A stretch of DNA of 64,000 bases from IMGVR_UViG_3300036770_004143:62001-126000; one strand, 5' to 3'; shown: positions 1 through 35,932, numbered from the stretch's first letter. Program-made: numbers and translations. The notes: generated from the letters alone by a model not told the origin.

Positions 1-1
1 A

Positions 2-412
2 AGTGCCTGAGTTCAAATATTTAGAATCGTTTATGGATCTTTTATTGTCATATAAATGCGTATAATTTGTTGGAGGCCATAAACCTTTTTCTGCACCCAT
101 AATAATATTGCAATTTAATAGTGTAAATTTATCAATAATATCATTTGGTGGTTTGATAAAGTTTGTATCTGTCGCATCTAAAAATAAAATATATTCATAT
201 TTGCCAATAATATTTAATTCTATATATTCTAAAACCTTTACTGTTTTATAGTAAAATAATTTATCATAGTAAGACCCATTAGTTATTAATCCTGAGTTTC
301 TAACAATATGAATGTTATCAATAGGAAAATATTTTATGGCGTTTTTGTAAAATGTTGGCTCATAATAATCAGGATAATCAAATAGTGCTGTGATTAATGC
401 TATTTTATTCAT
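2..412 (-). CDS. PLOD/LH3-like GT-A glycosyltransferase domain protein (3' end runs off window)
   Basis: Not in ORF track; hand translation from ATG at 412 gives MNKIALITALFDYP...YILFLDATDTNF...IIMGAEKGLWPP...KYLNSGT, matching the DxxD / AExxxWP / LNSG motifs of the lysyl-hydroxylase glycosyltransferase domain; open to window edge. Confidence 0.7.
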   Translation of the reverse strand, partial: MNKIALITALFDYPDYYEPTFYKNAIKYFPIDNIHIVRNSGLITNGSYYDKLFYYKTVKVLEYIELNIIGKYEYILFLDATDTNFIKPPNDIIDKFTLLNCNIIMGAEKGLWPPTNYTHLYDNKRSINDSKYLNSGT

Positions 413-413
413 G

Positions 414-1052
414 TTAATTATTATTAATTTGTTTATAAAATTCATTTATAAGATTCTCATCACTCATATATATTTTGTCTTCACCAAAAAACTTAAATGG
501 TATTTCATTTTCCCAAAAAAATATCAATTCGTTTCCTTTTGAATTTTCAATAATTTTATTTGAATCATCATAAACTTCAATAAATGAAAATTTGGGATAA
601 ATACAAACCATATTATTACTAATATCAATAATTTGTTTATGATGAGCATTTCCTCTATATTTATTACCCCATAAAAAAGAAAATTCATTAAATTTTGATG
701 GTACTGCAACATATCCTTTATGTGATATTTTGGGTAATAGTTCTAACAAATCTGTTGGAGTTATTATATCTTCCAAAGTATGAGAACAAATGCTATAATC
801 AAATTTACCATACTTGTTAACGTACTCTAATAATTCAATCCAAGTAGTTTTATCTTGTATGTTAAAGTTAAAAAATTTTACATCATCTTTTTTTATTTCA
901 ACAATATCCGCAACAAATTTACATTCAGGATATGACCAAAATTGTAATGATGCGCCAATATCAATAGTTTTTAAATTATTATCAGATATTATTTTTTTAA
1001 CTTCATCTATTAATTGTTTAACGGATTTGTTGTATTGCCAATGTGTTATCAT
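414..1052 (-). CDS. Putative class I SAM-dependent methyltransferase
   Basis: IDIGAS motif I and FDYSICSHTLED strand; lies in methyltransferase/GT operon. Confidence 0.55.
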   Translation of the reverse strand: MITHWQYNKSVKQLIDEVKKIISDNNLKTIDIGASLQFWSYPECKFVADIVEIKKDDVKFFNFNIQDKTTWIELLEYVNKYGKFDYSICSHTLEDIITPTDLLELLPKISHKGYVAVPSKFNEFSFLWGNKYRGNAHHKQIIDISNNMVCIYPKFSFIEVYDDSNKIIENSKGNELIFFWENEIPFKFFGEDKIYMSDENLINEFYKQINNN

Positions 1053-1659
1053 AATTTTTATTTAAGAAAAATATATCTTGTTGAATTAACTCATATGTTA
1101 TTGGGTGATTTATATTACCAATAAGTTCCACAGGTTTAAACCCCAAATTATCCATATATTCGTAAACAAATTCTTTTGCTGGTGAATTTTTATTATATTC
1201 AACCAAAGAGATTTCCATTAAAATACCCTTAGCTTTTTTGAATATATCTATTCCCCCATTTATAATATCAATCTCAGACCCTTGGACATCAATTTTTATT
1301 AAATCAAATGTTTTATTTAAAAATATATTAGAAATTGTTTTAGTTTGTTTTTTTTTAATAATGATTTGATCATCATCATAAAAAGATGTGTTCTCTCGAT
1401 AAATTGAATTACCTGTACACCTTGGTTCGTTTTTTCTAATGTAAAAATCAACTTGTTTTGCAACGTCACTTAATAAATCTATTGAGTAGTCAACCCCCAA
1501 AGTACGCAATACATCTTCACAAGTTTCATTACCCTCAATCAAATAATAATAAGCATTTGGAAATACAATCATACTTTCTTTATAAAACTGACCAACATTA
1601 GCACCTATATCTAAAATTGATTTAGGTTCAAAATAATCTTTAATTTTTTCTAAACCCAT
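1018..1659 (-). CDS. FkbM-family methyltransferase
   Basis: ILDIGANVGQF and LIKIDVQGSEIDII motifs. Confidence 0.85.
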   Translation of the reverse strand: MGLEKIKDYFEPKSILDIGANVGQFYKESMIVFPNAYYYLIEGNETCEDVLRTLGVDYSIDLLSDVAKQVDFYIRKNEPRCTGNSIYRENTSFYDDDQIIIKKKQTKTISNIFLNKTFDLIKIDVQGSEIDIINGGIDIFKKAKGILMEISLVEYNKNSPAKEFVYEYMDNLGFKPVELIGNINHPITYELIQQDIFFLNKNYDNTLAIQQIR

Positions 1660-1665
1660 AATGAA

Positions 1666-2220
1666 TTAAAAAATTACTACCCCAGTTCCGGTTAAATGAC
1701 CTAAATGTGAAATATCTATTTTATTAATATCAATAAACTTCCAAAAAGTAATCATTTCTTCATTTAATTTTATGTCATCTAGTAAAAGATAACCTTTGTA
1801 ATTTATTTCCTTTAAATAATTGAAAAAAGTTTTCTCAAATGTTCCATCATGGAAAGTATCAAGCAAAATATATCTTGAACTTAATATTAAATCTAAATAT
1901 TCTGGTTTTAATATGTCATCAATATATACATTAATATTTGTAGGGGTAACTGTTAAAGTTAATTGATTATGTAAATTAAATGTATTAATTTTATTACTTG
2001 AATTTATAGACATAGCTAATGCTGAACACCCTTTAAGTGTTCCTATATCTAACATTTTAATACCATCATTGTTTAATGATATATAAGATAATAATCTATA
2101 ATGTTCTACTGAAGATTTAGACGTAAAATAATCTCTATATTCTAAATCATCAATCTTCAAAGATAATGTTGATAAATCAATTTTATCTAAATCTAAATTT
2201 GTTATTTTTTCAAAATCCAT
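1666..2220 (-). CDS. Class I SAM-dependent methyltransferase (Methyltransf_24-like)
   Basis: MLDIGTLKGCSALAM, YILLDTFHD, YLLLDDI motifs. Confidence 0.7.
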   Translation of the reverse strand: MDFEKITNLDLDKIDLSTLSLKIDDLEYRDYFTSKSSVEHYRLLSYISLNNDGIKMLDIGTLKGCSALAMSINSSNKINTFNLHNQLTLTVTPTNINVYIDDILKPEYLDLILSSRYILLDTFHDGTFEKTFFNYLKEINYKGYLLLDDIKLNEEMITFWKFIDINKIDISHLGHLTGTGVVIF

Positions 2221-2222
2221 AT

Positions 2223-3473
2223 TTATAACTCACCAGTTAACCTATCACACCAACCTTTAGATTCGCTATGTGGCCAAATAACCCAATATTTTGGTTGCCT
2301 AACCGCATTGAATTCCCTCCATACTTTGCAATATTTGTCGGGATCATTTAACATTCTATTAATCTCATTCTTATCTGCATCTGCTCTATGGATTGTTTCA
2401 TCATTCTCATCATGAAAAGCAACAACCCAAAAATCATAATCTTTTTCTGGAACAGATGAATATGAAACATCAATGCAATGCTTAAAAACACTTGAAAATG
2501 AATTTAACCAATCTTGCTCACTTTCATAATTATATGTATTTGGTGGATAAGTATGATTTATTGTTTCCTCCTGGATTGCCCTCCTTTCAAATAACATACC
2601 AGCATATCTCTCATAATCCCTCAATGTTCTAACCTTTCCAAATCCAAACAAACCATCATGACCTTCTTGTGTTAAACCATCCATTCCAAATAATTTCTTA
2701 TTTATCAAATGGGATTTTCTATTCTTCTCTGTCCATTCCTTATCATCATCCCATTGTTTTGTTCTATTTTTCCTTGTATATTCATGATACACTGTCAATC
2801 TATGTGGATGAAATAAATCATAACCATGTGTATATGCTCTTGCTGCAATGGATATTTCCTCACCATGAAAATAATATTCTGGATTATGTTGAACTTCAAT
2901 AGAGAATTGACCCAATGTGAAACAAAAATGGGCTGAATAGAATCTTGCTGGGACTGGTAAGGTTAAACTTTGCCAATCTTTTATTGCATCTGGCAAAAAG
3001 AAAACAGCGCCCTCTGGAATAAATCTATCAAATAACATTCTCCAAGGTTCTTTTGACCTTGCCTCTGGGTCATTATCTGGATCAAAAGATGTTACATAAC
3101 CTGTTAATAATGGTTTTGGATGACCTGCTTTTTGTAAATCCTTAATCATTTTAATTAAGATTGTATCCCAATTTTTCTCAAATCTCATATGAGAATCAAT
3201 CTGCAAGGTGTATTCCTCTCCATCATATAACTGTTGGGTTAAATTTCTTGCCCAACAAACACCCTCTGTCTCATTATATGGAATGTCAAGTATCTTGAAT
3301 CTCTTATCTTTTCTCCACTTGTCTAATGTGTCAAATTTATCATTTGGATGATATTGTCGTGCAATTGCAATAACCAAATTTTTTGGATATTTGGCATTTG
3401 ATAACATATCTTCTATGGTTGATTCTAATAAATGGTCTCTGTAAGAGGCAATTTGAACGAAAATTTTGCTCAT
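2223..3473 (-). CDS. GT60-like (Skp1/Gnt1-type) protein alpha-GlcNAc transferase
   Basis: IFVQIASYRD, GVCWARN, EEYTLQIDSHMRF..WD, FYSAHFCF, FHGEEISIAARAYTHGYDLFHP, YHEY: motif series typical of the Skp1-hydroxyproline GlcNAc-transferase family. Confidence 0.8.
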   Translation of the reverse strand: MSKIFVQIASYRDHLLESTIEDMLSNAKYPKNLVIAIARQYHPNDKFDTLDKWRKDKRFKILDIPYNETEGVCWARNLTQQLYDGEEYTLQIDSHMRFEKNWDTILIKMIKDLQKAGHPKPLLTGYVTSFDPDNDPEARSKEPWRMLFDRFIPEGAVFFLPDAIKDWQSLTLPVPARFYSAHFCFTLGQFSIEVQHNPEYYFHGEEISIAARAYTHGYDLFHPHRLTVYHEYTRKNRTKQWDDDKEWTEKNRKSHLINKKLFGMDGLTQEGHDGLFGFGKVRTLRDYERYAGMLFERRAIQEETINHTYPPNTYNYESEQDWLNSFSSVFKHCIDVSYSSVPEKDYDFWVVAFHDENDETIHRADADKNEINRMLNDPDKYCKVWREFNAVRQPKYWVIWPHSESKGWCDRLTGEL

Positions 3474-3524
3474 ATTATTTATCTTATATAAAATATATAG
3501 TTTTTTTTTATTTAAAATAAATAA

Positions 3525-4067
3525 TTAAATTATTAATTGCCAATTTAATGTCTCTTCATTCCAATAATTATTACCATCACTTGGGTATGGTGTTGGTGAA
3601 ACATAATAATTATTCTGATTTAATGACCAACTATCAAATGGTTTCATTAATTCCCAATTTATAATATCTTCATTCCAAACATATCTGTTGTATATTTTAT
3701 ATGGCTCTGGTATGTTTGATGTATCTGGATATGGTATTGGTGAATTCCATAAGCAACTAAATTCCTCTAATATCCATGAAGGAAAAGGTTTTGGAGGGAT
3801 AAAAGCATCCCTAATGCTGTCGTAGTAGTAACCTATTCCAGCATAGTTTTTTCTAAATGCCTTGCTTTGGTCTTGGCTTGGTGTGTTGTTATCAGATTGA
3901 TAATGAACACCACCTCTTGTATTGTAAGAGGTGCGTTTTGCAACACAATTATATAAGTTTGAATAATTTGTTTCAGTATCCAAACCATCTATAATATACG
4001 TCTCATCTGCACCACTTATAACAGATGTGACAAAATTTTCATTATTTAAAAGTGCGTAATGTGCCAT
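3525..4067 (-). CDS. Small partner protein of Thr/Pro-rich fibre 2 (paralog of 7765..8157)
   Basis: [41 protein letters not shown] and PIPYP/W repeats; start overlaps stop of upstream gene at 4067. Confidence 0.75.
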   Translation of the reverse strand: MAHYALLNNENFVTSVISGADETYIIDGLDTETNYSNLYNCVAKRTSYNTRGGVHYQSDNNTPSQDQSKAFRKNYAGIGYYYDSIRDAFIPPKPFPSWILEEFSCLWNSPIPYPDTSNIPEPYKIYNRYVWNEDIINWELMKPFDSWSLNQNNYYVSPTPYPSDGNNYWNEETLNWQLII

Positions 4068-7000
4068 TATGAAAATGTTACTGTTCCAGAATTTTTAATT
4101 TCTCTAATGTTATAACTACCATCAGTATAACTTACTGCATTTGTTTCAGCACCATTTGATAATGTAATAGTTGCAGAAGATGTTAACCATCTTATTATAA
4201 CAACACCTCTGCCACCTTTACCACCAATTGGGGTCTGCCCACCTGTTGCACCACCACCACCACCACCAGTGTAATCAGTACCAACACCACCAGCAGTATT
4301 AGCATCACCTTGTGAACCATTACCTCCACCTCCTATATCACCAGTTCCAGCAGTTAATCCTCCTCCTGCTCCACCTCCACCACCTCCACCACGAGGTATA
4401 TTATTTCCTGTTATTGCCGAATATAATCCAACACCACCATTCCCAGATTTAGTATTTGGTATACTATCTTGACCTTGTGCACCAGCACCCCCACCTCCAC
4501 CAGTAATTGAATTTACACCAATATAATTACCCCCATCATAACCTTGATTAGGAGAACCAGAACCACCTTTGTTTTCATTAGTTCTATTAGCAGCTCCGCC
4601 ACCAGAACCACCATTTGACCCATTTTCTGAAAAACCACCAGAACCACCACCACCACCAGCAATAGAAGTAATAGTTGCAAAAACACTATTAGTGCCATTT
4701 TGACCTTTTACTGTATAGGTTCCACCATTACCACCACCACCAATAGTAACTGTGTAAGTTGTCCCTTTTGTTAAATATAATGCAGTTTCAGCAGCCGAGC
4801 CACCTCCTGATGTACCAAAAGAAGTTCTATAACCTCCAGCACCACCTCCACCACCACGGTCAGCACCACCTCCACCTCCACCAGCAATAACAAGGTAATC
4901 AACTTGAATAGGGGGAACTGTTGGTGTAACTGTTCTTGTTGGTGTGATTGTTGGTGTAATTGTATTTGTAGGTGTAATTGTATTAGTTGGAGTTATTGTT
5001 GTTGTTGGAGTTATGGTATTTGTAGGCGTTATTGTTTGTGTTGGTGTAATGGTATTTGTAGGTGTAATTGTATTAGTTGGAGTTTCTGTATTGGTTGGTG
5101 TTATGGTTGGAGTTGGCGTTTCTGTGTTTGTTGGTGTTATAGTTTGAGTTGGTGTTTCTGTATTGGTTGGTGTTATAGTTGGAGTTGGTGTTTCACTACT
5201 TGTTGGAGTTTGTGTTGGGGTTTCTGTGTTGGTTGGTGTAATTGTATTAGTTGGAGTAATTGTATTTGTAGGTGTTATAGTTTGTGTTGGAGTTTTACTA
5301 CTTGTTGGAGTTATTGTTGGGGTTTCTGTATTTGTTGGTGTTATAGTTTGAGTTGGTGTTTCTGTATTGGTTGGTGTTATAGTTGGAGTTGGTGTTTCTG
5401 TGTTTGTTGGTGTTATGGTTGGAGTAGATGTTTCACTACTTGTTGGTGTTATAGTTTGAGTTGGTGTTTCTGTATTGGTTGGTGTTATAGTTGGAGTTGG
5501 TGTTTCACTACTTGTTGGAGTTTGTGTTGGGGTTTCTGTGTTGGTTGGTGTAATTGTATTAGTTGGAGTAATTGTATTTGTAGGTGTTATAGTTTGTGTT
5601 GGAGTTTTACTACTTGTTGGAGTTATTGTTGGGGTTTCTGTGTTGGTTGGTGTTGGGGTTTCTGTATTTGTTGGGGTTATGCTTGGAGTTGGTGTTTCTG
5701 TGTTGGTTGGTGTTATAGTTGGAGTTGGTGTTTCACTACTTGTTGGAGTTTGTGTATTGGTTGGAGTTATGGTTGGAGTTGGTGTTTCTGTGTTTGTTGG
5801 TGTAATTGTATTTGTAGGTGTTATAGTTTGTGTTGGAGTTTCTGTGTTGGTTGGAGTAATTGTATTTGTAGGTGTTATAGTGCTAGTTGGTGTTATGCTT
5901 GGAGTTGCATCTTGAGATGCTCCTGGTGTTTTTGTTATAGATGGTGTGACAGTATTAGTTGATGTTATGCTTGGAGTAGGTGTAACTGTGTTGGTTGGAG
6001 TTGGAGTTTGTGTTGGTGTTTCTGTATTTGTTGGTGTTATGGTTGGTGTTGGGGTTTCTGTATTTGTTGGGGTTATGCTTGGAGTTGGAGTTTCACTACT
6101 TGTTGGAGTTTGTGTTGGTGTAACTGTATTTGTTGGAGTTATTGTTGGTGTTATTGTGTTGGTTGGTGTTATAGTTGGGGTTGCATCTTGTGATGCCCCT
6201 GGTGTTTTTGTTAGAGATGGTGTGACTGTATTTGTTGCTGTTATAGTTGGTGTAATTGTGTTTGTTGATGTTGGAGTTATACTACTTGTTGGTGTAATTG
6301 TGTTAGTTGGTGTTATAGTTTGAGTTGGAGTTATACTACTTGTTGGTGTAATTGTGTTTGTTGGTGTTATAGTTTGAGTTGGTGTTATACTACTTGTTGG
6401 TGTAATTGTGTTAGTTGGTGTTATGGTTGGTGTTGGTGTTTTACTAGTTGTTGATGTAACTGTATTGGTTGGTGTTACAATTATTATATTTGTGCTTGTT
6501 GGTGTTGGTGTTAAAGCAGAAATTAACCCTCCTTGCCAAAATATATTATTATCAATGGTTATTGTATTTTCAGAACTTCTACCAACAACCAGATGAGTTT
6601 GTGTTGCTGCGGTATTTGAAAATTCAATGGAATTGCCCAACCAAGGTGAAATATTTATATTATTTGCAATATTATCAATTCTATTTGCCAATCCATGTGT
6701 TACAATATTATTAATACCATATACACCAGCAAACACCAAACCAATTATTTTTCTTGTTCCATTTATATCAGCAATTAATGCTGAACCAGAATCACCAGGT
6801 GCTATTGGATAAATGCAAATGAATCCATTTGGTGTGGTTGCAGCACTTGCAACAAATTCAATACAATTATCAAATTGAATTGTTGTTGGTAATCCTTGTC
6901 TTTCATATGAAATTGATATAACAACATTTGTTGCATATGTTAATAATTTCATATCACCTTCACCTTTTGCACCTGAAGTTCTACCTGAACTAAATAGGTT

Positions 7001-7753
7001 TGGATTTAAATATAATAAATCATCAATTTCTTGTGTTGTTGCAAATTCTAGTGGTTCTGTCCAACCAGTTAAACCCAATTGCAAATATGATTCTGAATAA
7101 CTTATATCTGATTCATTTATTGTGGTTAATGCAACATCACTATTATTATAACCATCAAACCTTAAAGGATAATATTTTTTTATAAAACCAATTGAATTTT
7201 GCAATCCTTTATCAGTTGGTTCATTTGGTTGCGTTGCAACATTATTTAAAATATTTGATAATTGTAATCTTGGATTTCTATCACTTGTTATAAATGCATC
7301 TTCAACTAGAACATGGTTATTGGATACACCAACCAAAGAATTTGTTTCATTATCAATAGCCAAAAACCCTAATGTGCCAACCCATGATCCATTTGATGCT
7401 GTATAATTTGTTAAAGATATTCCACCTTGTAATGGTCTTATTTTATTTCTGTTATTTGGATTTGTTGTTTGCCAAGAATAAAAATCTGATGGACATTCTT
7501 CCAAGAATTTTATTTCACATTCAACAACATCTGTTTTAAATGTGTTGCCAGAAAAATTAATTATGCTTGGTATTTGTTCATTTTCTGGTATATCAGAAAT
7601 ATTTAATTTCTTTTTTACTTTAAAAATTAATGATTTCTCATCTGTAACCAAATTGTTGGTTGTTTTATAACCATAACCAACACCAATAATATTTTCAGAT
7701 GTCTCTTCAAAATATTTTAATGTTAATTCTGATAATAATTTTTGATCAATCAT
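4067..7753 (-). CDS. Nal1-like trypsin-fold serine protease + Thr/Pro mucin-like stalk + Gly-rich C-terminal domain; probable virion fibre/appendage
   Basis: GTLGFL..SNNHVL (His), SDVALT (Asp), PGDSGS (Ser); about 530 aa of TPT(N/I/Q) repeats; [20 protein letters not shown] Gly-rich domain. Confidence 0.75.
4920..6510 (-). repeat. Coding low-complexity Thr/Pro tandem repeats ([10 protein letters not shown]-type)
   Basis: gttggtgtt/gttggagtt periodicity on plus strand; boundaries approximate. Confidence 0.9.
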
Positions 7754-7764
7754 TTAAATTTTAT

Positions 7765-8157
7765 TTATGTATTATAAATATTCCATTGTTTATTTTCCTC
7801 ATCCCAATAATATTGGTTGCCATCATTTGGATAAGGTATAGGTGGTTGCCATAAGCAACTAAATTCATCTAATGTCCAACTTGGGTATGGTTTTGGTGGG
7901 ATGAAAGCGTCCCTTATACTATCGTAATAATAACCTATTCCAGCATAGTTTTTTCTAAATGCCTTGCTTTGGTCAAGGCTTGGTGTATTGTTGTCGGATT
8001 GGTAGTGAATACCACCATGTGTGTTGTAGGATGTGCGTTTATGAACTATACCTAATTCATTAAACCAACCAATTTCACCATCCCAATCATCTTCATGACC
8101 AGCACTCTTCATATCTATTACAAAATTATTTTCATCTAAAACTGCATAATACGCCAT
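7765..8157 (-). CDS. Small partner protein of Thr/Pro-rich fibre 1 (paralog of 3525..4067)
   Basis: MAYYAVLDENNFV start at 8157 matches paralog; shares a 44-bp identical block (7931-7974 = 3829-3872). Confidence 0.75.
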   Translation of the reverse strand: MAYYAVLDENNFVIDMKSAGHEDDWDGEIGWFNELGIVHKRTSYNTHGGIHYQSDNNTPSLDQSKAFRKNYAGIGYYYDSIRDAFIPPKPYPSWTLDEFSCLWQPPIPYPNDGNQYYWDEENKQWNIYNT

Positions 8158-8171
8158 AATGTTATATTTTA

Positions 8172-11100
8172 TTACCATGAAATATTACCACTACCAGCAG
8201 TAAAAGTATATGTTTTATACCCTGCCCTTGCTGTTGATGGTGCAGGTGCAGTAGTTGTACCAGCTGCTTGACCATTACATACATGAGATGAGTGAATAGT
8301 TAATAAATTTGGAAAATTATCTGGATATGAAATAATTACAACGCCAGAACCACCTGAACCAGACACACCTGTACTACCTCTTTGTGCACCGCCACCACTA
8401 CCAGTATTTTGCACACCATTTCCTCCTGACCCAGGATTTCCTGCTACACCACCATTTGTACCTGGTGTTCCAGTTGAAGCCGACCCTGAACCAGCCCCTC
8501 CTCCTGCATAATCTTTTAAAATACCAGTAATATCTGATTTTTGGGAGTTTCCACCATTACCAACCAAATTTAAACCACCTGCACTACCAGCACCACCACC
8601 ACCACCACCAGCATTAGTGGTTGCAGTACCCCCAATATTACCTTGAATTGGATTTGTGTTTCTGCTCCCACCCGAAGCACCTCCACCAGCACCACTTGGT
8701 GCACCACCACCGCCTGAACCACCTGAACCACCTGGAGTATTTGAATACCATCCACCACCACCTCCACCAACACTTACTATATTTGCAAAAACAGAATTAT
8801 TACCTGGAACTTGATTTACATTTGACCCACCCTGACCACCAGGACCAACAGTTACTATATATGGTGTGTTCTTATTTATTAAGAATGAATTTTCTAAATT
8901 GCCCCCACCTCCAGTATTAGTAACTGTTGAACGCATTCCACCTGCTCCACCACCACCATTTCCTGGTGTTGTTGGGCTATCAGCGCCTCCAGCACCACCA
9001 CCAGCAACTACAAGGTAATCAACTGTAACAGTTGTTGGAATTGGCGAGGTTGTTGGAGTAATTGTTCTAGTTGGAGTTATGCTATTTGTTGGTGTTATGG
9101 TATTTGTAGGAGTTATAGTGTTGGTAGGTGTTATAGTATTTGTTGGTGTTATAGTGTTAGTTGGTGTTATGGTATTTGTTGGTGTAATTGTTGGTGTTAT
9201 AGTGTTAGTAGGTGTTATGGTTGGAGTTGGTGTTTCACTACTTGTTGGAGTTTGTGTTGGTGTTATAGTTTGAGTTGGTGTTTCACTACTTGTTGGAGTT
9301 TGTGTTGGTGTTTCTGTATTGGTTGGTGTTATGGTTGGAGTTGGTGTTTCACTACTTGTTTGAGTTTGTGTTGGTGTTATAGTTTGAGTTGGTGTTTCAC
9401 TACTTGTTGGAGTTTGTGTTGGTGTTTCTGTATTGGTTGGTGTTATGGTTGGAGTTGGTGTTTCACTACTTGTTGGAGTTTGTGTTGGTGTTATAGTTTG
9501 AGTTGGAGTGATTGTATTTGTAGGTGTTACTGTATTAGTTGGTGTTATGGTTGGAGTTGGTGTTTCACTACTTGTTTGAGTTTGTGTTGGTGTTATAGTT
9601 TGAGTTGGTGTTTCACTACTTGTTGGAGTTTGTGTTGGTGTTTCTGTATTGGTTGGTGTTATGGTTGGAGTTGGTGTCTCACTACTTGTTGGAGTTTGTG
9701 TTGGTGTTATAGTTTGAGTTGGTGTGATTGTATTTGTTGGTGTTACTGTATTAGTTGGAGTAATGGTTGGAGTTGGGTCTTGTGATGCTCCTGGTGTTTT
9801 TGTTACAGATGGTGTAATTGTATTTGTTGGTGTTATGCTTGGAGTAGATGTTTCACTACTTGTTGGAGTTTGTGTTGGTGTTTCTGTGTTGGTTGGTGTA
9901 ACTGTATTTGTTGGTGTTATGCTTGGAGTAATTGTGTTAGTTGGCGTTGGAGTTTCACTACTTGTTGGAGTTTGTGTTGGTGTTTCTGTATTGGTTGGTG
10001 TTATAGTTGGTGTTGCATCTTGTGATGCCCCTGGTGTCTTTGTTAGAGATGGTGTGACTGTATTTGTTGTAGTTATAGTTGGTGTAATTGTTTTGGTAGG
10101 TGTTGTAGTTATAGTTGGTGTAATTGTGTTGGTAGGTGTTGGAGTTTCACTACTTGTTGGAGTTATGGTTGGTGTTACTGTTTTTGTTGGTGTAATTGTT
10201 AGAGTTGTTGTTTGACTTATTGTTGGTGTGATGGTTGGAGTTATAATAAATATATTTGTACTTGTTGGTGTTGATGTAACAGATGGTGTTATAATTGGTG
10301 CTATATTTGGGAAGAATAAGAATATTGTTCTTATTGAATCATCATAAGAAGTAATAGTTGGTGTTATTGTTGGTGTAACAGTATTTGTTGGTGTTATTGT
10401 ATTTGTTGGTGTTATTGTATTTGTTGGTGTTATTGTTGATGTTCTTGTTACTGTTGGTGTTCTTGTTGCTGTTCTTGTTGGTGTTACTGTTCTTGTTAGT
10501 GTAGGTGTTGGTGTTAATGTTCTTGTAGGTGTAATACTTGGTGTTATAGTGTTTGTTGGAGTTTGTGTTGGTGTTATTGTATTTGTAGTTGTAACACTTG
10601 GTGTTATGCTATTTGTTGGAGTTTGTGTTGGTGTTACACTTGGTGTTGGAGGTACTATTATAATAGGTTCTTTATCTGGATTGAACGGATCAATTAATCC
10701 ATATTTTGTTTTTAATATTTTAAAATTATGTCTTACTTGTCCAGCATTTAATGGTTCAATATACATTCTAAATGCTCCCACATCACCAATTAAACTACCA
10801 CCAAATTCTTCTTCAAGAATGATATTTGTTGTTAAACCAGAATATGATGTATTATTTAATATATTAGTTGGCAATAATTCTGAATCTTGTATTAAATCAT
10901 TATTTGTTAATAATATTTGTATTTCTTCATTTTCTGTGCATGAACTTAATGTAAGGGAATCTTTAAGACCTTGTGTTCCACCCCCAATTGAAATATTGAA
11001 AGGTACACCAATTTGTCTTTCTTTTAGGGTATTTAATGGTCTTGGGATAATTTCCTCAAAATTATCAATGATGAAGAATATTTTACCATTTATGTATATT

Positions 11101-12476
11101 CTTAAATTTCCATTTCTATATTTTTTTGTATTAATCCATGATTGGTCAAAGTTAACCACTTCAATGGATGCATTTGTTTCACCACTTAATTTTGGTTGAA
11201 TTAATTCAATGCTTCTATCTGCTGTTGTTGCTGTATATTGGCTTGATATTAATAAACCTAATCCCCCAAGTTCTTTTAAATCACAATTTTCAATTAATCT
11301 ATCTCTAACAAATACTGCATCAATTTGAACCCAATTTTCATTTTGGATATATGTTGTATTTTTAAATTGGTCAAATATTCCTTTTGTTGAACACCATTGA
11401 TTTATGGTTGCACCTGATGTTTCACAAGTCCCTGTTAAGGTGAAAGTTTTAACACAGACTATTGGATTTCCAGAATCACCACTTAATTGAATTGATAATG
11501 CATTTGATACACCATCATATAATGGATTTGTTTCTGGGAATATTACATCTTTATCATAATTTGTAACACCAGTTATGGGATATACTTTATTGCAAGTTGA
11601 TGCTGAATATGTGGATGCTGAATAAGTTGAATTGCAAAGGCAAGTATCCAAGCAAGTTAAACCTGATGTTGGTCTTGTATAACCTGTGAATGATGTTGGA
11701 TGACCATCAGCATAATGATAAAATTTATTTTCTGCTCTTGCACCTAAATAAAAGAATGTTCCTTTATTTTGTGGATATCTTTCATTTAATCCCACTTGGG
11801 TATCCCCGGTCCATCTATATTTTAATATGAATTCTGCTGTCCAACCAAGATTTGGTCTTTCTGGGAATATTTCATAATCATAACCAAATAATCTATAAAA
11901 TCCTTGATAAAATCCCCCAGATAAATTTGCATATAAACCTGTGCTATTTGTTGAACCTGATGATATATTATAAGTATAACTATCATCATTATATATTCTA
12001 TTTGTGGTTGTTGTAAAACCTGTTATTGGATGAAGTTTTAATCTTCTATCAAATTTGTTTCTATTAAAAATATCATTTGGTGATGTGTATAATCCTGTAT
12101 TTATTTCAATGGTTTCACCTGAAATGTTTTGTGTTAACCCATTATCAATTCCTGTTAAACCAACATCACATAATGAAATTTTATTTTGATATGTATTTGC
12201 TGTTAAATTATAATTTTCTGGATTATAATAATTTTTTGAAACAATAACATCTGTGTTAAAATTATTGCAATTGATGCAAATGCTTGTTCCAGAATAGGAG
12301 AAATCAAAATTGAATGGCATTCTATTTCCATCATCTTCAGCAATTAATTTTGATGAAAAAACAGTTTCTTCATCATAATTCAATTCATCTGATGCCAAAC
12401 TTATATCAATAATTTCATTTACAGGTCTAAATCCAATCTTATTGAAATTATATTGATTAATATTTTGATAACTCAT
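8172..12476 (-). CDS. LamG/concanavalin-like domain + Thr/Pro mucin-like stalk + Gly-rich C-terminal domain; probable virion fibre/appendage
   Basis: NGNLRIYINGK..ISIGGG..GDVGAFRMYIEPLNAGQVRHNF LamG-like pattern; about 530 aa TP repeats; VDYLVVAGGGAGG Gly-rich domain. Confidence 0.65.
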   Translation of the reverse strand: MSYQNINQYNFNKIGFRPVNEIIDISLASDELNYDEETVFSSKLIAEDDGNRMPFNFDFSYSGTSICINCNNFNTDVIVSKNYYNPENYNLTANTYQNKISLCDVGLTGIDNGLTQNISGETIEINTGLYTSPNDIFNRNKFDRRLKLHPITGFTTTTNRIYNDDSYTYNISSGSTNSTGLYANLSGGFYQGFYRLFGYDYEIFPERPNLGWTAEFILKYRWTGDTQVGLNERYPQNKGTFFYLGARAENKFYHYADGHPTSFTGYTRPTSGLTCLDTCLCNSTYSASTYSASTCNKVYPITGVTNYDKDVIFPETNPLYDGVSNALSIQLSGDSGNPIVCVKTFTLTGTCETSGATINQWCSTKGIFDQFKNTTYIQNENWVQIDAVFVRDRLIENCDLKELGGLGLLISSQYTATTADRSIELIQPKLSGETNASIEVVNFDQSWINTKKYRNGNLRIYINGKIFFIIDNFEEIIPRPLNTLKERQIGVPFNISIGGGTQGLKDSLTLSSCTENEEIQILLTNNDLIQDSELLPTNILNNTSYSGLTTNIILEEEFGGSLIGDVGAFRMYIEPLNAGQVRHNFKILKTKYGLIDPFNPDKEPIIIVPPTPSVTPTQTPTNSITPSVTTTNTITPTQTPTNTITPSITPTRTLTPTPTLTRTVTPTRTATRTPTVTRTSTITPTNTITPTNTITPTNTVTPTITPTITSYDDSIRTIFLFFPNIAPIITPSVTSTPTSTNIFIITPTITPTISQTTTLTITPTKTVTPTITPTSSETPTPTNTITPTITTTPTKTITPTITTTNTVTPSLTKTPGASQDATPTITPTNTETPTQTPTSSETPTPTNTITPSITPTNTVTPTNTETPTQTPTSSETSTPSITPTNTITPSVTKTPGASQDPTPTITPTNTVTPTNTITPTQTITPTQTPTSSETPTPTITPTNTETPTQTPTSSETPTQTITPTQTQTSSETPTPTITPTNTVTPTNTITPTQTITPTQTPTSSETPTPTITPTNTETPTQTPTSSETPTQTITPTQTQTSSETPTPTITPTNTETPTQTPTSSETPTQTITPTQTPTSSETPTPTITPTNTITPTITPTNTITPTNTITPTNTITPTNTITPTNTITPTNSITPTRTITPTTSPIPTTVTVDYLVVAGGGAGGADSPTTPGNGGGGAGGMRSTVTNTGGGGNLENSFLINKNTPYIVTVGPGGQGGSNVNQVPGNNSVFANIVSVGGGGGGWYSNTPGGSGGSGGGGAPSGAGGGASGGSRNTNPIQGNIGGTATTNAGGGGGGAGSAGGLNLVGNGGNSQKSDITGILKDYAGGGAGSGSASTGTPGTNGGVAGNPGSGGNGVQNTGSGGGAQRGSTGVSGSGGSGVVIISYPDNFPNLLTIHSSHVCNGQAAGTTTAPAPSTARAGYKTYTFTAGSGNISW
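9030..10660 (-). repeat. Coding low-complexity Thr/Pro tandem repeats
   Basis: Repeating [21 protein letters not shown] units; boundaries approximate. Confidence 0.9.
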
Positions 12477-12531
12477 TTATATATATATTATAATAAATAG
12501 TATTTAAATGATATTTATGAATAAAAGTCAA

Positions 12532-13326
12532 ATGATAAATATTAACAAAGAATATTTTAATTCACCTTATTATTTTTTAATTACAGAAAAGACTGACAAA
12601 TATTCATTATATTTCTCAATAAGCAACACATTATCTGAGGCAAGGGATAATGATGATGTTTTTCATTTTGATAAAAAAAATATTAAAAAAGTAAAAAACC
12701 ATTTAAATAAAATGGTTAAGGGAAAGAAACCAACAACAAAAAAGAAGTTGAAAAGAGAACTTGAAGAATTGGTTGGGGATGATGGGTCAATGTTAACATC
12801 AAAAATTCCAATTCTAAATAGCCCCCAACATACGCATAGAACATTAGACCAGATTGTTCCAGCAACAAGGCAAACAAATGACCCAGTTACTCGTGGGTAT
12901 AGAACATATTATGGTGAGAGTGTTGATGATGAAATATCTGAAGTTGATTTATCTGGGGCATTTGGATATGAGGAAACCAAGAATATGGATGGTAAAAAAA
13001 CATATAAATATATGGTGAATAAACTTGGTGTTGAACCTGATGAGGCAAAAGAAAGAACAAAGCAATTTGGTAAGGATCCATATGGAAAAGCTACAAAAAA
13101 GAAGAAGAAGGGGTCAATTGATAAGATGACCTTATCTGAATTAAATAAGGGGAATTTATTAAAGATGGTGGAAGATTTGCTTGTGAATAAGGGGGGTGAT
13201 AATGACATTCAAATATCAAAGGATATTAATCCAATTATTCAAAAAAACATAAAAATGTTGAAAACCCAAGCAGAAAAGAATGGATTATCATTAAATGATT
13301 TAATTAAAATGTTAAAAAGTGAATAG
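12532..13326 (+). CDS. Hypothetical phage protein
   Basis: Long ORF; start moved to 12532 because an ATATTTAT motif lies at 12511-12518. Confidence 0.6.
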   Translation: MININKEYFNSPYYFLITEKTDKYSLYFSISNTLSEARDNDDVFHFDKKNIKKVKNHLNKMVKGKKPTTKKKLKRELEELVGDDGSMLTSKIPILNSPQHTHRTLDQIVPATRQTNDPVTRGYRTYYGESVDDEISEVDLSGAFGYEETKNMDGKKTYKYMVNKLGVEPDEAKERTKQFGKDPYGKATKKKKKGSIDKMTLSELNKGNLLKMVEDLLVNKGGDNDIQISKDINPIIQKNIKMLKTQAEKNGLSLNDLIKMLKSE

Positions 13327-28143: not shown

Positions 28144-28348
28144 TATGGATAAGATTGAAAATATCATTGAGTTTTCAAAAGATTTGAAAAATAAAACCAA
28201 TGCACAGATTATAGAAAGTCTTGATACTTTAAATGAAGAGTTTAATGTTACAAAGAATGTTGTTATTAACTTGACACACAATTTGGATAAGATTGAGGAG
28301 TTATATACAATAATCCTAAAAGAGTATAATACAAGACAGAATGGATAA
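28121..28348 (+). CDS. Small coiled-coil hypothetical protein
   Basis: 75-aa ORF overlapping both neighbours; start may be a few codons downstream. Confidence 0.5.
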   Translation: MPKKDMDNMDKIENIIEFSKDLKNKTNAQIIESLDTLNEEFNVTKNVVINLTHNLDKIEELYTIILKEYNTRQNG

Positions 28349-32070: not shown

Positions 32071-32666
32071 TGGAAAAAGAAACAATAAAAAGAATATTTG
32101 AGTTCCTTGAAGAAAAGGAAGGGAAAAAACATAAAGATAGAGATAACTTTATTTGGAAATTAAAATTTAATGAACCCCTAACAAAAGATGATTTAGTTGT
32201 TAATGGTGATTTGGATTTAACAGATTCAACATTAAAATCATTACCAGATAATTTGGAAGTTAAAGGTGGTATGCTTACTAGATTTTCAAGAATAGAAGAA
32301 TTACCAAAAGGGTTGAAAGTTGGTGGTACTTTGGATTTATCCTACTCTAGGATAAAAAACATACCAGATGATATTAAAATTGGTAATTCTTTGTATTTAC
32401 ACAATACAAAAATAACTTCACTACCAGAAGGATTGAAAGTTGGTGGTAGTTTAAGTTTAGTTTTTGCAGATATAGAATCATTACCAGAAGGGTTGAAAGT
32501 TGGTGATATTTTGCATTTACAGCGTTCAAAAATAACTTCATTACCAAAAGGGTTGGAAGTTAAAGGTGAGTTGATTATTAAAAATACAGCATTATTAGAA
32601 TACACAAATAATGAATTAAGAGAAATGATTAAACCTGGATTTATAAAAGGAGACATAATAAGATAA
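32070..32666 (+). CDS. LRR-like solenoid family member A2
   Basis: Same caps and repeats; TAATG coupling. Confidence 0.85.
   Translation: MEKETIKRIFEFLEEKEGKKHKDRDNFIWKLKFNEPLTKDDLVVNGDLDLTDSTLKSLPDNLEVKGGMLTRFSRIEELPKGLKVGGTLDLSYSRIKNIPDDIKIGNSLYLHNTKITSLPEGLKVGGSLSLVFADIESLPEGLKVGDILHLQRSKITSLPKGLEVKGELIIKNTALLEYTNNELREMIKPGFIKGDIIR
32124..32431 (+). repeat. 308-bp direct repeat, copy 1 (identical to 34321-34628)
   Basis: Base-by-base comparison by eye found no mismatch. Confidence 0.85.
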
Positions 32667-33064
32667 TGGAAAAAGAACAATTAAAAAGAATATTTGAGTT
32701 CCTTAAAACAAAGGAAAATCTTAACCAACCACTTGTGTGGAAGTTGAAAACTAATATGCCATTAAGAAAAGAAGATTTGGAAATTAATGGTGATTTGCAA
32801 TTATCAAATATAACATCATTGCCAGATGGATTGGAAGTTAAGGGTACTTTGTATTTAGACAACTCAAGTATAACTTCACTGCCAGAAGGATTGAAAGTTG
32901 GTGATGATTTAAGTCTATATAATACAAAAATAACCTTATTACCAAAAGGTTTGAAAGTTGGGCGTAGTTTATTTATTAGAAATACTCCATTAGAAGATTA
33001 CACTAATGAAGAATTAAGAGATATGATAAACCCTGGATTTATAAAAGGAGACATAATAAGATAA
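32666..33064 (+). CDS. LRR-like solenoid family member A3 (3 repeats)
   Basis: Same caps and repeats; flanked by 44-bp direct repeats. Confidence 0.85.
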   Translation: MEKEQLKRIFEFLKTKENLNQPLVWKLKTNMPLRKEDLEINGDLQLSNITSLPDGLEVKGTLYLDNSSITSLPEGLKVGDDLSLYNTKITLLPKGLKVGRSLFIRNTPLEDYTNEELRDMINPGFIKGDIIR

Positions 33065-33642: not shown

Positions 33643-33646
33643 GATA

Positions 33647-35416: not shown

Positions 35417-35437
35417 CAGTGAAACAAAATAAAAACT

Positions 35438-35815: not shown

Positions 35816-35827
35816 TGTTTAAAACAC

Positions 35828-35910: not shown

Positions 35911-35932
35911 CGTAAACAAAAAAATCAAATGT

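What the first reader, a model, noticed from the sequence alone, without database searches (positions are those of the whole stretch)
6600..7753. Nal1-like serine protease displayed on a long mucin-like stalk
Seen: an intact His/Asp/Ser triad context (SNNHVL, SDVAL, GDSGS) preceded by a short pro-domain-like segment, joined to about 530 aa of TP repeats and a Gly-rich domain. Inference: a virion-tethered protease that cuts host S-layer, surface or biofilm proteins, or processes the fibre itself. A protease-on-a-stalk architecture is unusual for a phage appendage.
Basis: partly seen in the sequence, partly recalled or inferred. Interest (0 to 1): 0.6.

Follow-up and report, generated by a model that had tools for sequence, protein, structure and literature searches.

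The report
Phage fibre protein with Nal1-like protease
A 270-kb tailed phage encodes a 1,228-residue appendage protein that joins a serine protease of the plant NAL1 type, a 532-residue alternating-threonine tether and a tail-fibre receptor-binding tip. It also reveals a large, unstudied family of phage proteases.

Summary
ORF 4067-7753 (minus strand) encodes 1,228 aa in three parts.

- **aa 1-413, protease.** The predicted fold matches rice NAL1 far better than any other protease: Z 30 against Z 19 for alpha-lytic protease. His147, Asp206 and Ser322 are essentially invariant in 239 relatives.
- **aa 414-945, tether.** This is a strict (Thr-X)n polymer, about 165 nm if extended.
- **aa 946-1228, tip.** This is a Gly_rich_2 domain. 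Its fold matches the receptor-binding tip of cyanophage Pam3 fibre gp24 and a Bxb1 tail-tip protein (Z 12-13).

All four Gly_rich_2 genes in this genome are followed by a paralogous small gene, as a fibre gene is followed by its chaperone gene. The 'pro-domain' is the counterpart of NAL1's ATP-binding and trimerising domain.

The protease module belongs to a phage family of more than 700 proteins. About two thirds stand alone at roughly 410 aa. The rest are N-terminal fusions to varied binding domains, and the gene often sits directly after a giant T/P-rich gene.

The topology is probably the reverse: the adhesin is at the far end and the protease is the conserved N-terminal module. Substrate, virion location and glycosylation remain inferred.

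The parts
4067..7753 (-). Whole ORF, 1,228 aa plus stop (P0001): protease, then (Thr-X)n tether, then Gly-rich fibre tip
   Evidence: The ORF is base-identical in a second IMG/VR contig, L014.
7454..7753 (-). aa 1-~100: N-domain equivalent to the NAL1 ATP-binding/trimerisation domain (one helix plus 4-5 strands). K30, K49 and D75 are nearly invariant.
   Evidence: Model residues from 1 onward superpose on NAL1 from residue 91. NAL1 domain limits are from PMC12012508. 8 of 22 relatives give sub-threshold NAL1_N PF25608 hits.
6620..7438 (-). aa ~106-378: chymotrypsin-fold serine protease domain with His147 (7313-7315), Asp206 (7136-7138) and Ser322 (6788-6790) in GDSGS
   Evidence: Z 19, rmsd 2.3-2.7 A to alpha-lytic protease and SGPB over model 106-373; Z 30 to NAL1. 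Foldseek E 3e-15 to NAL1. The triad is invariant in 239 relatives. Pfam Trypsin scores 19.2 bits, just under its 20.6 cut-off.
6515..6619 (-). aa 379-413: family-specific C-terminal extension ending in the conserved ...YWQ.GL motif. This marks the module boundary: stand-alone relatives end here and linkers begin here in fusions.
   Evidence: Alignment A1, architectures, low model confidence of 57-69.
4919..6514 (-). aa 414-945: 532-aa tether, a strict (Thr-X)n polymer. 241 of 243 Thr lie in one phase; X is mostly Pro, Ile, Asn, Ser, Glu or Gln. There are 278 Ser/Thr in total.
   Evidence: The same alternation occurs in paralogues A and C and in relatives' linkers.
4070..4918 (-). aa 946-1228: TNF-like plus glycine-rich (Gly_rich_2) domain with the fold of phage tail-fibre tips
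   Evidence: PF21722 E 2e-17 and phrog_2295 E 2.5e-47. Model pLDDT 91.6. Z 13.2 to Bxb1 tail tip 9d93_Qa, Z 12.4 to Pam3 fibre 7ypx_A residues 94-280, Z ~5 to the ALK/LTK glycine-rich domain.
3525..4067 (-). Small partner gene (180 aa, phrog_7759). Its start overlaps the fibre gene's stop (TAATG). Candidate fibre chaperone or assembly factor.
   Evidence: A paralogue follows each of the four Gly_rich_2 genes in the genome.
2223..3473 (-). Glycosyltransferase of the Pfam 'GlcNAc' family (PF11397). Candidate O-glycosylating enzyme for the Thr-rich tethers.
   Evidence: PF11397 E 2e-67 and phrog_24687 E 2e-158. Syntenic at 69-71% identity in close relatives L018 and L023.
1018..1659 (-). FkbM-family methyltransferase in the same tightly packed minus-strand gene string
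   Evidence: PF05050 E 4e-14.
8172..12476 (-). Paralogous appendage gene C (1,434 aa): a different ~600-aa N-domain, then Thr-X tether, then Gly_rich_2
   Evidence: A homologue of its N-domain sits directly upstream of the protease gene in L023.
7765..8178 (-). Small partner gene of paralogue C (137 aa, phrog_7759)

Best explanation
The gene encodes a modular, tail-fibre-type appendage protein of a ~270-kb myovirus, with three parts.

1. **aa 1-413:** a catalytically competent serine protease homologous at fold level to plant NAL1. It has the ATP-binding/trimerising domain plus the chymotrypsin-fold domain, but lacks NAL1's N-terminal hexamerisation segment.
2. **aa 414-945:** a 532-residue strictly alternating (Thr-X)n tether. 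It is probably an extended, O-glycosylated thread of up to ~165 nm.
3. **aa 946-1228:** a TNF-like/glycine-rich domain of the kind that forms the distal, receptor-binding tip of Pam3 gp24-type fibres. It is probably folded with help from the small protein encoded immediately downstream.

Proposed working (inferred). The Gly-rich tip binds a host surface molecule. The tether links that contact to the conserved N-terminal protease module. That module sits at the virion-proximal or hub end and cleaves protein: either host surface proteins once the particle is drawn in, or the phage's own T/P-rich fibre proteins.

Shown here: domain identities, conservation of the catalytic residues, the pairing with a small downstream gene, and the family's architectures and gene order.

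Inferred: virion location, orientation, oligomeric state, glycosylation and substrate.
For: **Protease**
- NAL1 chains give Z 22-30 (rmsd ~3.5 A, ~320 residues, model 1-378 on NAL1 91-457). Alpha-lytic protease and SGPB give Z 19. DegP/HtrA give Z 14.
- Foldseek gives E 3e-15 to NAL1.
- His, Asp, Ser and GDSGS are kept in essentially all 239 relatives.
- Atlas neighbours are viral clusters at TM ~0.8 and bacterial clusters carrying NAL1_N, Nal1_C and Peptidase_S64.

**Fibre tip**
- Z 12-13 to the Pam3 fibre and the Bxb1 tail tip.
- In Pam3 this domain is the distal receptor-binding end and needs the downstream chaperone gp25 (PMC9608196).
- 4 of 4 Gly_rich_2 genes in this genome are followed by a phrog_7759 paralogue. 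One of the four lies next to the tail sheath gene.
- Stand-alone Gly_rich_2 genes in small phages lie among structural genes: downstream of a capsid gene in one case, just upstream of an endolysin-type peptidase in another, and flanked by Mtd_N genes in a third.

**Family logic**
- More than 700 relatives were found, and 105 viral contigs.
- The protease is always N-terminal, and about a third of the family is fused through T/P/S linkers to varied C-terminal domains. These include DUF642, SprB repeats, DUF285, LRR, LamG and FN3, and what I read by eye as a beta-helix in P0160.
- In about 34 of 80 loci the gene lies directly downstream of a giant T/P-rich ORF, often with a 4-nt gap.
- One 703-aa relative lies just after gp25 and baseplate-J genes.
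- Neighbours across the family include head-tail adaptor (7) and tail sheath (2) genes.

**Other**
- A separate head-maturation protease exists in the head module, window 42848-43549.
- A glycosyltransferase of the GlcNAc family and an FkbM methyltransferase lie in the same gene string. From my own knowledge, PF11397 corresponds to CAZy GT60. GT60 enzymes make GlcNAc-alpha-O-Thr on T. cruzi mucin-like proteins (PMC9472816).
Against: - There is no direct evidence that the protein is in virions.
- The gene's neighbours here are glycosyl- and methyltransferases and replication genes, not a clear baseplate module. No gp25 Pfam match exists anywhere in the genome.
- An enzymatic 413-aa domain is an unusual virion-docking module. 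Pam3-type fibres dock through an N-terminal helix, which is absent here.
- Two thirds of relatives are stand-alone proteases with no binding domain, so the module must also work without a tether.
- NAL1 needs its N-terminal segment and a hexamer for activity (PMC12012508). That segment is missing, so the active state here is unknown.
- The glycosyltransferase does not co-occur with T/P-rich neighbours beyond close relatives (Fisher p 0.75).
- The repeat length rests on one metagenome assembly.
Confidence: 0.5

Rival explanations
1. The shared Gly-rich domain anchors the protein to the virion. The protease is the payload at the free end of the stalk, and it cuts host S-layer, surface or biofilm proteins to clear a path.
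For: - Four proteins in this genome share the Gly_rich_2 domain but carry different N-terminal domains, as if one common anchor held different payloads.
- In relatives the stand-alone protease gene occupies the position just after a giant fibre gene. In T-even phages a tip adhesin gene can sit there (the comparison is from general knowledge).
- Catalysis is strongly conserved.
Against: - In the solved homologue (Pam3 gp24) the Gly-rich domain is the distal, host-binding end.
- In paralogue A the Gly-rich domain is internal and followed by a further 400-aa C-terminal domain.
- Across the family the protease is the constant N-terminal part and the C-terminal domains vary. In fibres that pattern marks the C-terminus as the host-specific end.
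Confidence: 0.2
2. An assembly or maturation protease for the phage's own fibres. It processes the giant T/P-rich proteins encoded beside it, or cleaves itself at the conserved ...WQ.GL boundary to release the tether and tip. It does not act on the host.
For: - The protease gene lies directly after giant T/P-rich ORFs in about 34 of 80 loci, often 4 nt apart.
- It is fused to such linkers in about a third of members.
- The module boundary is sharply conserved.
- Related folds, such as the alpha-lytic protease pro-region and the viral polyprotein proteases among weaker BFVD hits, do act in cis (general knowledge).
Against: - Stand-alone members have nothing to cleave in cis, yet keep the triad.
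- No cleavage products are known.
- Thr/Pro-rich, probably glycosylated linkers are usually protease-resistant (general knowledge of cellulase PT linkers).
- A 515-aa variant in other assemblies looks like a collapsed repeat, not a processing product.
Confidence: 0.2
3. Not a virion part. It is a soluble protease released at lysis and aimed at the host surface by its fibre-tip-like domain. It could, for example, destroy receptors on debris or neighbouring cells, or loosen a matrix.
For: - There is no signal peptide or clear baseplate context.
- C-terminal domains in relatives look like targeting or binding modules.
- Stand-alone members could be free enzymes.
Against: - The Gly_rich_2 domain with its small downstream gene follows the fibre gene plus chaperone gene pattern.
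- Some relatives sit in baseplate or tail gene strings.
Confidence: 0.08
4. The protease fold is only a structural trimerising or docking module, and its chemistry is irrelevant.
For: NAL1's equivalent domains form trimers through ABD-SPD contacts (PMC12012508). A trimer would suit a fibre.
Against: Near-total conservation of His, Asp, Ser and the GDSGS oxyanion-hole motif over 239 sequences down to 25% identity is not expected for a purely structural role.
Confidence: 0.02

Closest known systems
Rice NARROW LEAF 1 (NAL1) serine protease (PDB 8PMI, 7Y77, 8PN2, 8PMG)
   Same: - Both have the two-part fold: a small N-terminal helix-plus-sheet domain (NAL1's ATP-binding domain, residues 89-172) packed on a chymotrypsin-type double barrel.
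- The His-Asp-Ser triad is in the same order.
- Z 30, rmsd 3.5 A over 327 residues.
- Lys30, Lys49 and Asp75 are nearly invariant. By a simple offset they fall near NAL1's ATP/Mg ligands R120, K139 and D166. This is a lead only.
   Different: - Only ~15% identity. No NAL1 hit by sequence or profile against PDB, and no Pfam Nal1_C hit.
- It lacks NAL1 residues 1-88, which are needed for the active hexamer, and the region after residue 458.
- It is encoded by a phage and fused to a tether and a fibre tip.
- Substrates and oligomeric state are unknown.
Alpha-lytic protease / Streptomyces griseus proteases (MEROPS S1, bacterial subfamily)
   Same: The core catalytic domain superposes almost completely: 191 of 198 residues, rmsd 2.5 A, Z ~19.
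   Different: - There is no secretion signal or pro-region.
- It has an extra N-domain and a C-terminal extension.
- Sequence identity is 15-20%.
Cyanophage Pam3 tail fibre gp24 with chaperone gp25; Bxb1 tail-tip protein (9D93 chain Qa); more distantly phage S16 gp38 and the ALK/LTK glycine-rich domains
   Same: - The C-terminal TNF-like plus glycine-rich domain matches: Z 12-13 over ~167 residues.
- A small gene immediately downstream accompanies every copy, like gp24 with gp25.
   Different: - Pam3 gp24 is ~280 aa with an N-terminal docking helix. Here that part is replaced by a 413-aa protease and a 532-aa tether.
- The small partner (phrog_7759) shows no detectable similarity to known chaperones.
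Enzyme-bearing phage receptor-binding proteins (tailspike depolymerases, virion-associated lysins)
   Same: The design logic is shared: a catalytic domain and a host-binding function in one appendage protein, with swappable modules.
   Different: - The catalytic domain here is a protease acting on peptide bonds, not a glycanase or cell-wall hydrolase.
- It is N-terminal and separated from the binding domain by a very long flexible tether.
Thr/Pro-rich O-glycosylated domains: cellulase PT linkers, T. cruzi mucin-like proteins and gp72
   Same: - The Thr/Pro-rich repetitive composition is shared.
- A glycosyltransferase of the Pfam GlcNAc family (PF11397) is encoded two genes away. From my own knowledge, PF11397 corresponds to CAZy GT60, the family of the T. 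cruzi polypeptide alpha-GlcNAc transferases.
- T. cruzi gp72 has a similar alternating T-X stretch.
   Different: - The two-residue periodicity is strict over 532 residues: 241 of 243 Thr in one phase.
- The length is extreme.
- Glycosylation was not shown, and the phage has no prolyl hydroxylase.
Peptidase S74 intramolecular chaperone domain of tailspikes and fibres
   Same: Both are proteolytic domains within a phage fibre protein.
   Different: S74 is C-terminal, uses a Ser-Lys dyad, has an unrelated fold and removes itself after trimerisation (general knowledge). No such Pfam hit was found here.

Membership tests
Nal1-like serine proteases (PA-clan, chymotrypsin fold) | Double beta-barrel chymotrypsin fold | tested here: met
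   Z 19, rmsd 2.3-2.7 A over ~190 residues to alpha-lytic protease and SGPB. Z 30 to NAL1. Model pLDDT 82, pTM 0.88.
Nal1-like serine proteases (PA-clan, chymotrypsin fold) | His-Asp-Ser triad in that order, with GDSG-type nucleophile motif | tested here: met
   H147, D206 and S322 in GDSGS. They are conserved in 237/237, 236/238 and 239/239 relatives.
Nal1-like serine proteases (PA-clan, chymotrypsin fold) | NAL1-type accessory domain (ATP-binding domain, NAL1 89-172) preceding the protease domain | tested here: met
   Model residues 1-378 superpose on NAL1 91-457. 8 of 22 relatives give NAL1_N PF25608 hits, best E 9e-6.
Nal1-like serine proteases (PA-clan, chymotrypsin fold) | Pfam NAL1_N / Nal1_C match at gathering threshold | tested here: not met
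   P0001 has no hit to either. Relatives reach 17-25.7 bits on NAL1_N against a cut-off of 27. Nal1_C gives nothing. The relationship is visible at fold level only.
Nal1-like serine proteases (PA-clan, chymotrypsin fold) | NAL1 N-terminal segment (1-88) that builds the active hexameric cage | tested here: not met
   The phage protein starts at the equivalent of NAL1 residue ~91 (PMC12012508).
Nal1-like serine proteases (PA-clan, chymotrypsin fold) | Trimer/hexamer assembly | tested here: inconclusive
   The two-copy complex prediction gave no verdict. A three-copy job exceeds the size limit.
Nal1-like serine proteases (PA-clan, chymotrypsin fold) | Proteolytic activity | not testable with these tools
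   Needs a wild-type versus Ser322Ala enzyme assay.
Phage tail fibres with TNF-like/glycine-rich tip (Pam3 gp24 type; Pfam Gly_rich_2) | Gly_rich_2 domain above Pfam threshold | tested here: met
   64.2 bits against 24.3. phrog_2295 E 2.5e-47.
Phage tail fibres with TNF-like/glycine-rich tip (Pam3 gp24 type; Pfam Gly_rich_2) | Fold of the solved fibre tip | tested here: met
   Z 12.4 to Pam3 7ypx_A residues 94-280 and Z 13.2 to Bxb1 9d93_Qa. The next hits, ALK/LTK, are at Z ~5.
Phage tail fibres with TNF-like/glycine-rich tip (Pam3 gp24 type; Pfam Gly_rich_2) | Dedicated chaperone gene immediately downstream | tested here: inconclusive
   A phrog_7759 paralogue follows all four Gly_rich_2 genes. 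One overlaps the stop codon as TAATG.
Phage tail fibres with TNF-like/glycine-rich tip (Pam3 gp24 type; Pfam Gly_rich_2) | N-terminal baseplate-docking helix | tested here: not met
   The N-terminus is the protease module.
Phage tail fibres with TNF-like/glycine-rich tip (Pam3 gp24 type; Pfam Gly_rich_2) | Presence in the virion / binding to host | not testable with these tools
   Needs virion proteomics, EM or adsorption assays.
Mucin-like / PT-linker O-glycosylated domains | Thr/Ser/Pro-rich tandem repeats | tested here: met
   46% Thr, 19% Pro, 18-nt unit, 278 Ser/Thr.
Mucin-like / PT-linker O-glycosylated domains | Cognate polypeptide glycosyltransferase | tested here: inconclusive
   A PF11397 enzyme lies two genes downstream and is syntenic in close relatives. 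Across 80 loci it does not co-occur with T/P-rich genes (p 0.75).
Mucin-like / PT-linker O-glycosylated domains | Actual O-glycans on the repeats | not testable with these tools
   Needs glycoproteomics.
Head-maturation (prohead) proteases | Location in the head module and match to prohead protease families | tested here: not met
   A separate prohead protease (phrog_207, E 4e-42) lies between the portal and capsid genes at window 42848-43549. The Nal1-like gene is ~35 kb away and matches none of those families.

The most novel reading that the evidence does not exclude
The Nal1-like module defines a widespread, so far unstudied class of virion-borne proteases in large aquatic phages. It would be a protein-cutting counterpart of tailspike depolymerases. 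It may be latent as a trimer until engaged, and it is carried on glycosylated (Thr-X)n threads more than 100 nm long that end in exchangeable adhesins. The same fold family would link phage and bacterial proteins to the origin of the plant yield gene NAL1.
Probability: 0.3. Interest if true: 0.75.

Novelty: new variant of a known kind. Interest (0 to 1): 0.6.

Why it matters
Enzymes known on phage receptor-binding appendages are almost all glycan or cell-wall hydrolases. A conserved, catalytically intact serine protease at the head of fibre-type proteins would add a new activity to the infection toolkit. The family is large (more than 700 proteins, over 100 viral contigs), so this could point to protein layers or phage fibre processing as targets.

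It also gives NAL1, an agronomically important plant protease with an unusual ATP-binding domain and cage assembly, a large set of viral and bacterial relatives for comparison.

The strictly alternating (Thr-X)n tether, with a GlcNAc-family glycosyltransferase gene two genes away, is a testable case of virion glycosylation. It is also a natural, very long, probably protease-resistant linker.

Tried and rejected
- **Cultured-phage searches.** tblastn of the protease and the Gly-rich domain, and megablast of 19.5 kb of the window, against 50,697 GenBank phage records gave no match. The Gly-rich query is probably masked as low complexity.
- **PDB by sequence or profile.** The protease gave only marginal hits to the GDSG region of 3C and chymotrypsin, and no NAL1. 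The Gly-rich profile and the small partner gave nothing.
- **NCBIfam.** No hits.
- **Complex prediction.** Two copies of aa 1-415 gave no verdict, which is evidence neither way. Three copies exceed the size limit.
- **Promoter/terminator scan of window 1-13000.** Fewer sites than in shuffles, so uninformative.
- **Prolyl hydroxylase.** None in the genome, so a Skp1-type hydroxyproline-GlcNAc route is unlikely.
- **gp25 Pfam model.** No match in the genome.
- **Glycosyltransferase and T/P-rich gene co-occurrence over 80 loci.** Not significant.
- **Prokaryote genomes.** 185,579 genomes scanned with two family peptide patterns gave no relatives. This is a pattern-limited search, not proof of absence. 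The Atlas shows more distant bacterial proteins of the same fold.
- **Rejected readings.** It is not the prohead protease, because a separate one exists. It is not an S74-type C-terminal autoprotease, given the wrong position and no match. The plus-strand ORFs inside the repeats (for example 4904-5962) are shadows of the repeat.
- **Not run.** The large representative protein search was not run, because no claim here depends on it.


Full report
**Setting.** The window is bases 62,001-126,000 of a 270,075-bp IMG/VR virus record, about 30% G+C and estimated ~90% complete. It is a tailed phage with a contractile tail.
- The capsid protein (window 37254-39047), portal (44814-46664) and large terminase (46680-48464) genes are in the window.
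- A head-maturation protease lies at 42848-43549.
- A 1,049-aa tail sheath gene lies at genome 28074-31223.
- No close relative exists among 50,697 GenBank phage records.

**The observation.** ORF 4067-7753 on the minus strand is open for 1,228 codons. The reported interval 6600-7753 corresponds to aa 1-385. The T/P-rich region is aa 414-945 (532 aa), and the C-terminus scores well above threshold on Pfam Gly_rich_2 (64.2 against 24.3 bits).

**The protease module (aa 1-413).**
- Sequence methods see little. Pfam Trypsin reaches 19.2 bits, just under its cut-off, over the GDSGS region. A PHROG annotated 'protease' matches aa 20-162.
- A word-based search found 727 relatives, most of them ~410-aa proteins labelled hypothetical.
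- An AlphaFold2 model built on 22 of them is confident (pLDDT 82, pTM 0.88).
- Foldseek's best PDB matches are all rice NARROW LEAF 1 (E 3e-15 to 1e-11), followed by alpha-lytic protease and Streptomyces proteases.
- VIA-align gives NAL1 Z 22-30 (best 30.4, rmsd 3.5 A, 327 residues, model 1-378 on NAL1 91-457), alpha-lytic protease and SGPB Z ~19 (model 106-373, rmsd 2.3-2.7 A), and DegP/HtrA Z ~14.
- The gap between 30 and 19 arises because the N-terminal ~100 residues also superpose. They match NAL1's ATP-binding domain (residues 89-172), which forms the trimer interface with the protease domain (PMC12012508).
- NAL1's first 88 residues build the hexameric cage needed for its activity. They have no counterpart here.
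- At sequence level, 8 of 22 relatives give NAL1_N hits (best E 9e-6) and 7 give Trypsin hits, all under threshold. None hits Nal1_C.
- In the ESM Atlas the nearest folds are viral clusters (TM ~0.8) and bacterial clusters carrying NAL1_N, Nal1_C or Peptidase_S64. BFVD's best hit is an uncharacterised protein of 'Virus NIOZ-UU157' (TM 0.90).

**Is it an enzyme?** I aligned 239 distinct family members (25-100% identity to the query) to the family profile.
- His147 is kept in 237 of 237 aligned, Asp206 in 236 of 238 and Ser322 in 239 of 239. The whole GDSGS motif is kept in all of them. That argues for catalysis under selection.
- Lys30, Lys49 and Asp75 in the N-domain are almost as conserved. 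By a simple 90-residue offset they fall near NAL1's ATP/Mg ligands (R120, K139, D166). I record this as a lead, not a residue-level alignment.
- I could not measure triad distances because model coordinates are not exposed.

**The tether (aa 414-945).**
- Tandem Repeats Finder shows 18-nt and multiple-of-18 periods with 62-91% matches.
- At protein level the region is more regular than 'TP repeats' suggests. 241 of its 243 threonines lie in one phase, so it is a (Thr-X)n polymer. X is mostly Pro, Ile, Asn, Ser, Glu or Gln, and uninterrupted [T/S]-X runs reach 330 residues.
- The two '[12 protein letters not shown]' interruptions keep the phase and are shared with the paralogues.
- Fully extended, the region would span about 165 nm.
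- The same alternation is seen in the linkers of relatives.

**The C-terminal domain (aa 946-1228).**
- A model built on 22 homologues is very confident (pLDDT 91.6).
- Its best matches are a chain of the mycobacteriophage Bxb1 tail tip (Z 13.2, 167 residues, 35% identity) and cyanophage Pam3 fibre gp24 residues 94-280 (Z 12.4). The ALK/LTK glycine-rich domains follow at Z ~5.
- In Pam3 this TNF-like plus glycine-rich unit is the distal, receptor-recognising end of the fibre. An N-terminal helix docks to the baseplate, and the protein needs the chaperone gp25 encoded next to it (PMC9608196).
- Gly_rich_2 is a very large, almost exclusively viral family (2,439 hits; Atlas).
- Stand-alone members in small phage contigs lie among structural genes. 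One lies downstream of a capsid gene, one just upstream of an endolysin-type peptidase, and one among Mtd_N genes.

**Paralogues and partners.** The genome has four Gly_rich_2 proteins:
- this one;
- gene C directly upstream (window 8172-12476; a different ~600-aa N-domain plus a Thr-X tether);
- gene A at genome 32493-36485 (a 75-aa N-domain, a 640-aa tether, the Gly-rich domain and a further 400-aa C-terminal domain), two small genes away from the tail sheath gene;
- gene D at genome 267530-269830 (no tether).

Each is followed on the same strand by a paralogue of one small protein family, phrog_7759 (E 1e-42 to 1e-127 among them). For the protease gene the stop and the partner's start overlap as TAATG. 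A 4-of-4 pairing follows the fibre gene plus chaperone gene pattern.

**The family's architectures and gene order.**
- Searching with the full-length protein as length reference found 85 long relatives. In all of them the protease is N-terminal.
- The C-terminal parts differ: DUF642, SprB repeats, DUF285, LRR, LamG-type, RCC1, FN3/cadherin, a reprolysin-like domain, and what I read by eye as a right-handed beta-helix in P0160.
- Among 80 viral loci, about two thirds are stand-alone and a third are fused through short T/P/S linkers. Only this phage has the long tether plus Gly-rich tip.
- In close relatives the local gene order is conserved. A divergent junction is followed by one or more giant T/P-rich ORFs (829-3,120 aa), then the protease gene 4 nt later, then further T/P-rich ORFs. 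In two of them the same glycosyltransferase follows at 69-71% identity.
- Over all 80 loci, 43 have another T/P-rich ORF within 10 kb. About 34 have a large T/P-rich ORF immediately upstream.
- One 703-aa relative lies after gp25 and baseplate-J genes.
- Among 121 neighbours scanned, the commonest named PHROGs are head-tail adaptor (7), helicases (4) and tail sheath (2). The structural-module signal is therefore real but modest.
- No relative was found in 185,579 prokaryote genomes with the two search patterns.

**Glycosylation context.** Downstream in the same tightly packed minus-strand string lie three relevant genes:
- a PF11397 'GlcNAc' glycosyltransferase (E 2e-67);
- an FkbM-family methyltransferase;
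- across the divergent junction, a GT1-like enzyme.

From my own knowledge, PF11397 corresponds to CAZy GT60. Published GT60 members add GlcNAc-alpha to Thr of T. cruzi mucin-like proteins (PMC9472816, PMC3769586). T. cruzi gp72 carries a similar alternating T-X stretch (PMC3630849). No prolyl hydroxylase is encoded. Glycosylation of the tether is a reasonable inference, but the co-occurrence test over all loci was not significant (p 0.75).

**Interpretation.**
- What is shown: a three-part protein made of a Nal1-type, catalytically conserved protease, a (Thr-X)n tether and a tail-fibre-tip domain with a dedicated small partner gene. It belongs to a large phage family in which the protease is the constant N-terminal module.
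- What I infer: it is a virion appendage in which the Gly-rich tip is the distal host-binding end, and the protease is at the proximal or hub end.
That picture remains a live rival, because four proteins share the Gly-rich domain while their N-domains differ.
- The substrate is open. Host surface proteins and the phage's own T/P-rich fibre proteins are both compatible with the gene order.
- It is not the head-maturation protease or an S74-type autoprotease.

**Limits.**
- The complex prediction gave no verdict.
The length of the repeat region rests on the assembly.
- The second contig (L014) is base-identical over 9,664 bases but begins inside gene C's repeat, so it is not independent.
- A 515-aa variant in other assemblies joins the start of the tether to the end of the partner gene. 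It looks like a collapsed or deleted repeat.

**Verdict.** The finding is real and more specific than first described. The fold assignment is strong. The appendage role is probable. The target is unknown. Because the family is large and unstudied, and the architecture is new for a fibre-type protein, I rate it a new variant of known kinds with moderate to high interest.

Noticed in passing
Genome 32493-36485, 66067-69753, 70172-74476 and 267530-269830 (window 4067-7753 and 8172-12476 for the middle two): There are four Gly_rich_2 appendage genes with different N-terminal parts. Each is followed by a paralogue of the same small phrog_7759 gene, so the phage may carry four kinds of fibre.
   Followed up: yes
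window 10700-12476 (aa 1-~600 of the 1,434-aa paralogue C): This large N-terminal domain has no Pfam, PHROG or NCBIfam match. A 43%-identical homologue sits directly upstream of the protease gene in relative L023, so it is a second conserved 'head' module of unknown function.
   Followed up: partly
P0002 (515 aa, 99% identical; other assemblies): This variant joins ~95 aa of tether in frame to the last ~25 aa of the small partner gene. That deletes the rest of the tether and the Gly-rich domain. It is either an assembly collapse or a natural deletion variant.
   Followed up: partly
window 9664 (start of contig L014): A second IMG/VR contig of 103 kb is base-identical to the window but breaks inside the repeat of paralogue C. 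The T/P repeats are therefore assembly break points.
   Followed up: yes
P0001 aa 30, 49 and 75 (window ~7529-7666): Lys30, Lys49 and Asp75 in the N-domain are almost invariant across 239 relatives. By offset they lie near NAL1's ATP/Mg-binding residues, so a nucleotide or other ligand site may be kept.
   Followed up: partly
genome 28074-31223: The tail sheath gene is 1,049 aa. The recognisable sheath domains lie only in aa ~654-1046, which leaves a ~650-aa N-terminal extension.
   Followed up: no
window 37254-39047: The major capsid protein is 597 aa, with the recognisable capsid fold only in aa ~343-573, so it has a long N-terminal part.
   Followed up: no
window 28341-29843 and 29864-31366: Two adjacent 500-aa ORFs of equal length have no PHROG match. 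They may be a tandem duplication.
   Followed up: no
genome 16410-17600: A transposase gene (phrog_506, E 4e-133) sits inside the phage genome.
   Followed up: no
loci L026, L032, L034, L036, L037, L040-L047: A 122-aa ORF lies immediately downstream of the protease gene in many relatives. It may be a conserved partner.
   Followed up: no
window 7754-7764 and 4060-4075: There is no Shine-Dalgarno-like sequence ahead of the ORF (AT-rich spacer), and relatives carry SprB repeats. Together these hint at a Bacteroidota host, which is unverified.
   Followed up: no
window 4904-6323 and 9079-10215, plus strand: Long plus-strand ORFs rich in Cys, Trp, Val and Gly are frame shadows of the T/P repeats, not genes.
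   Followed up: yes
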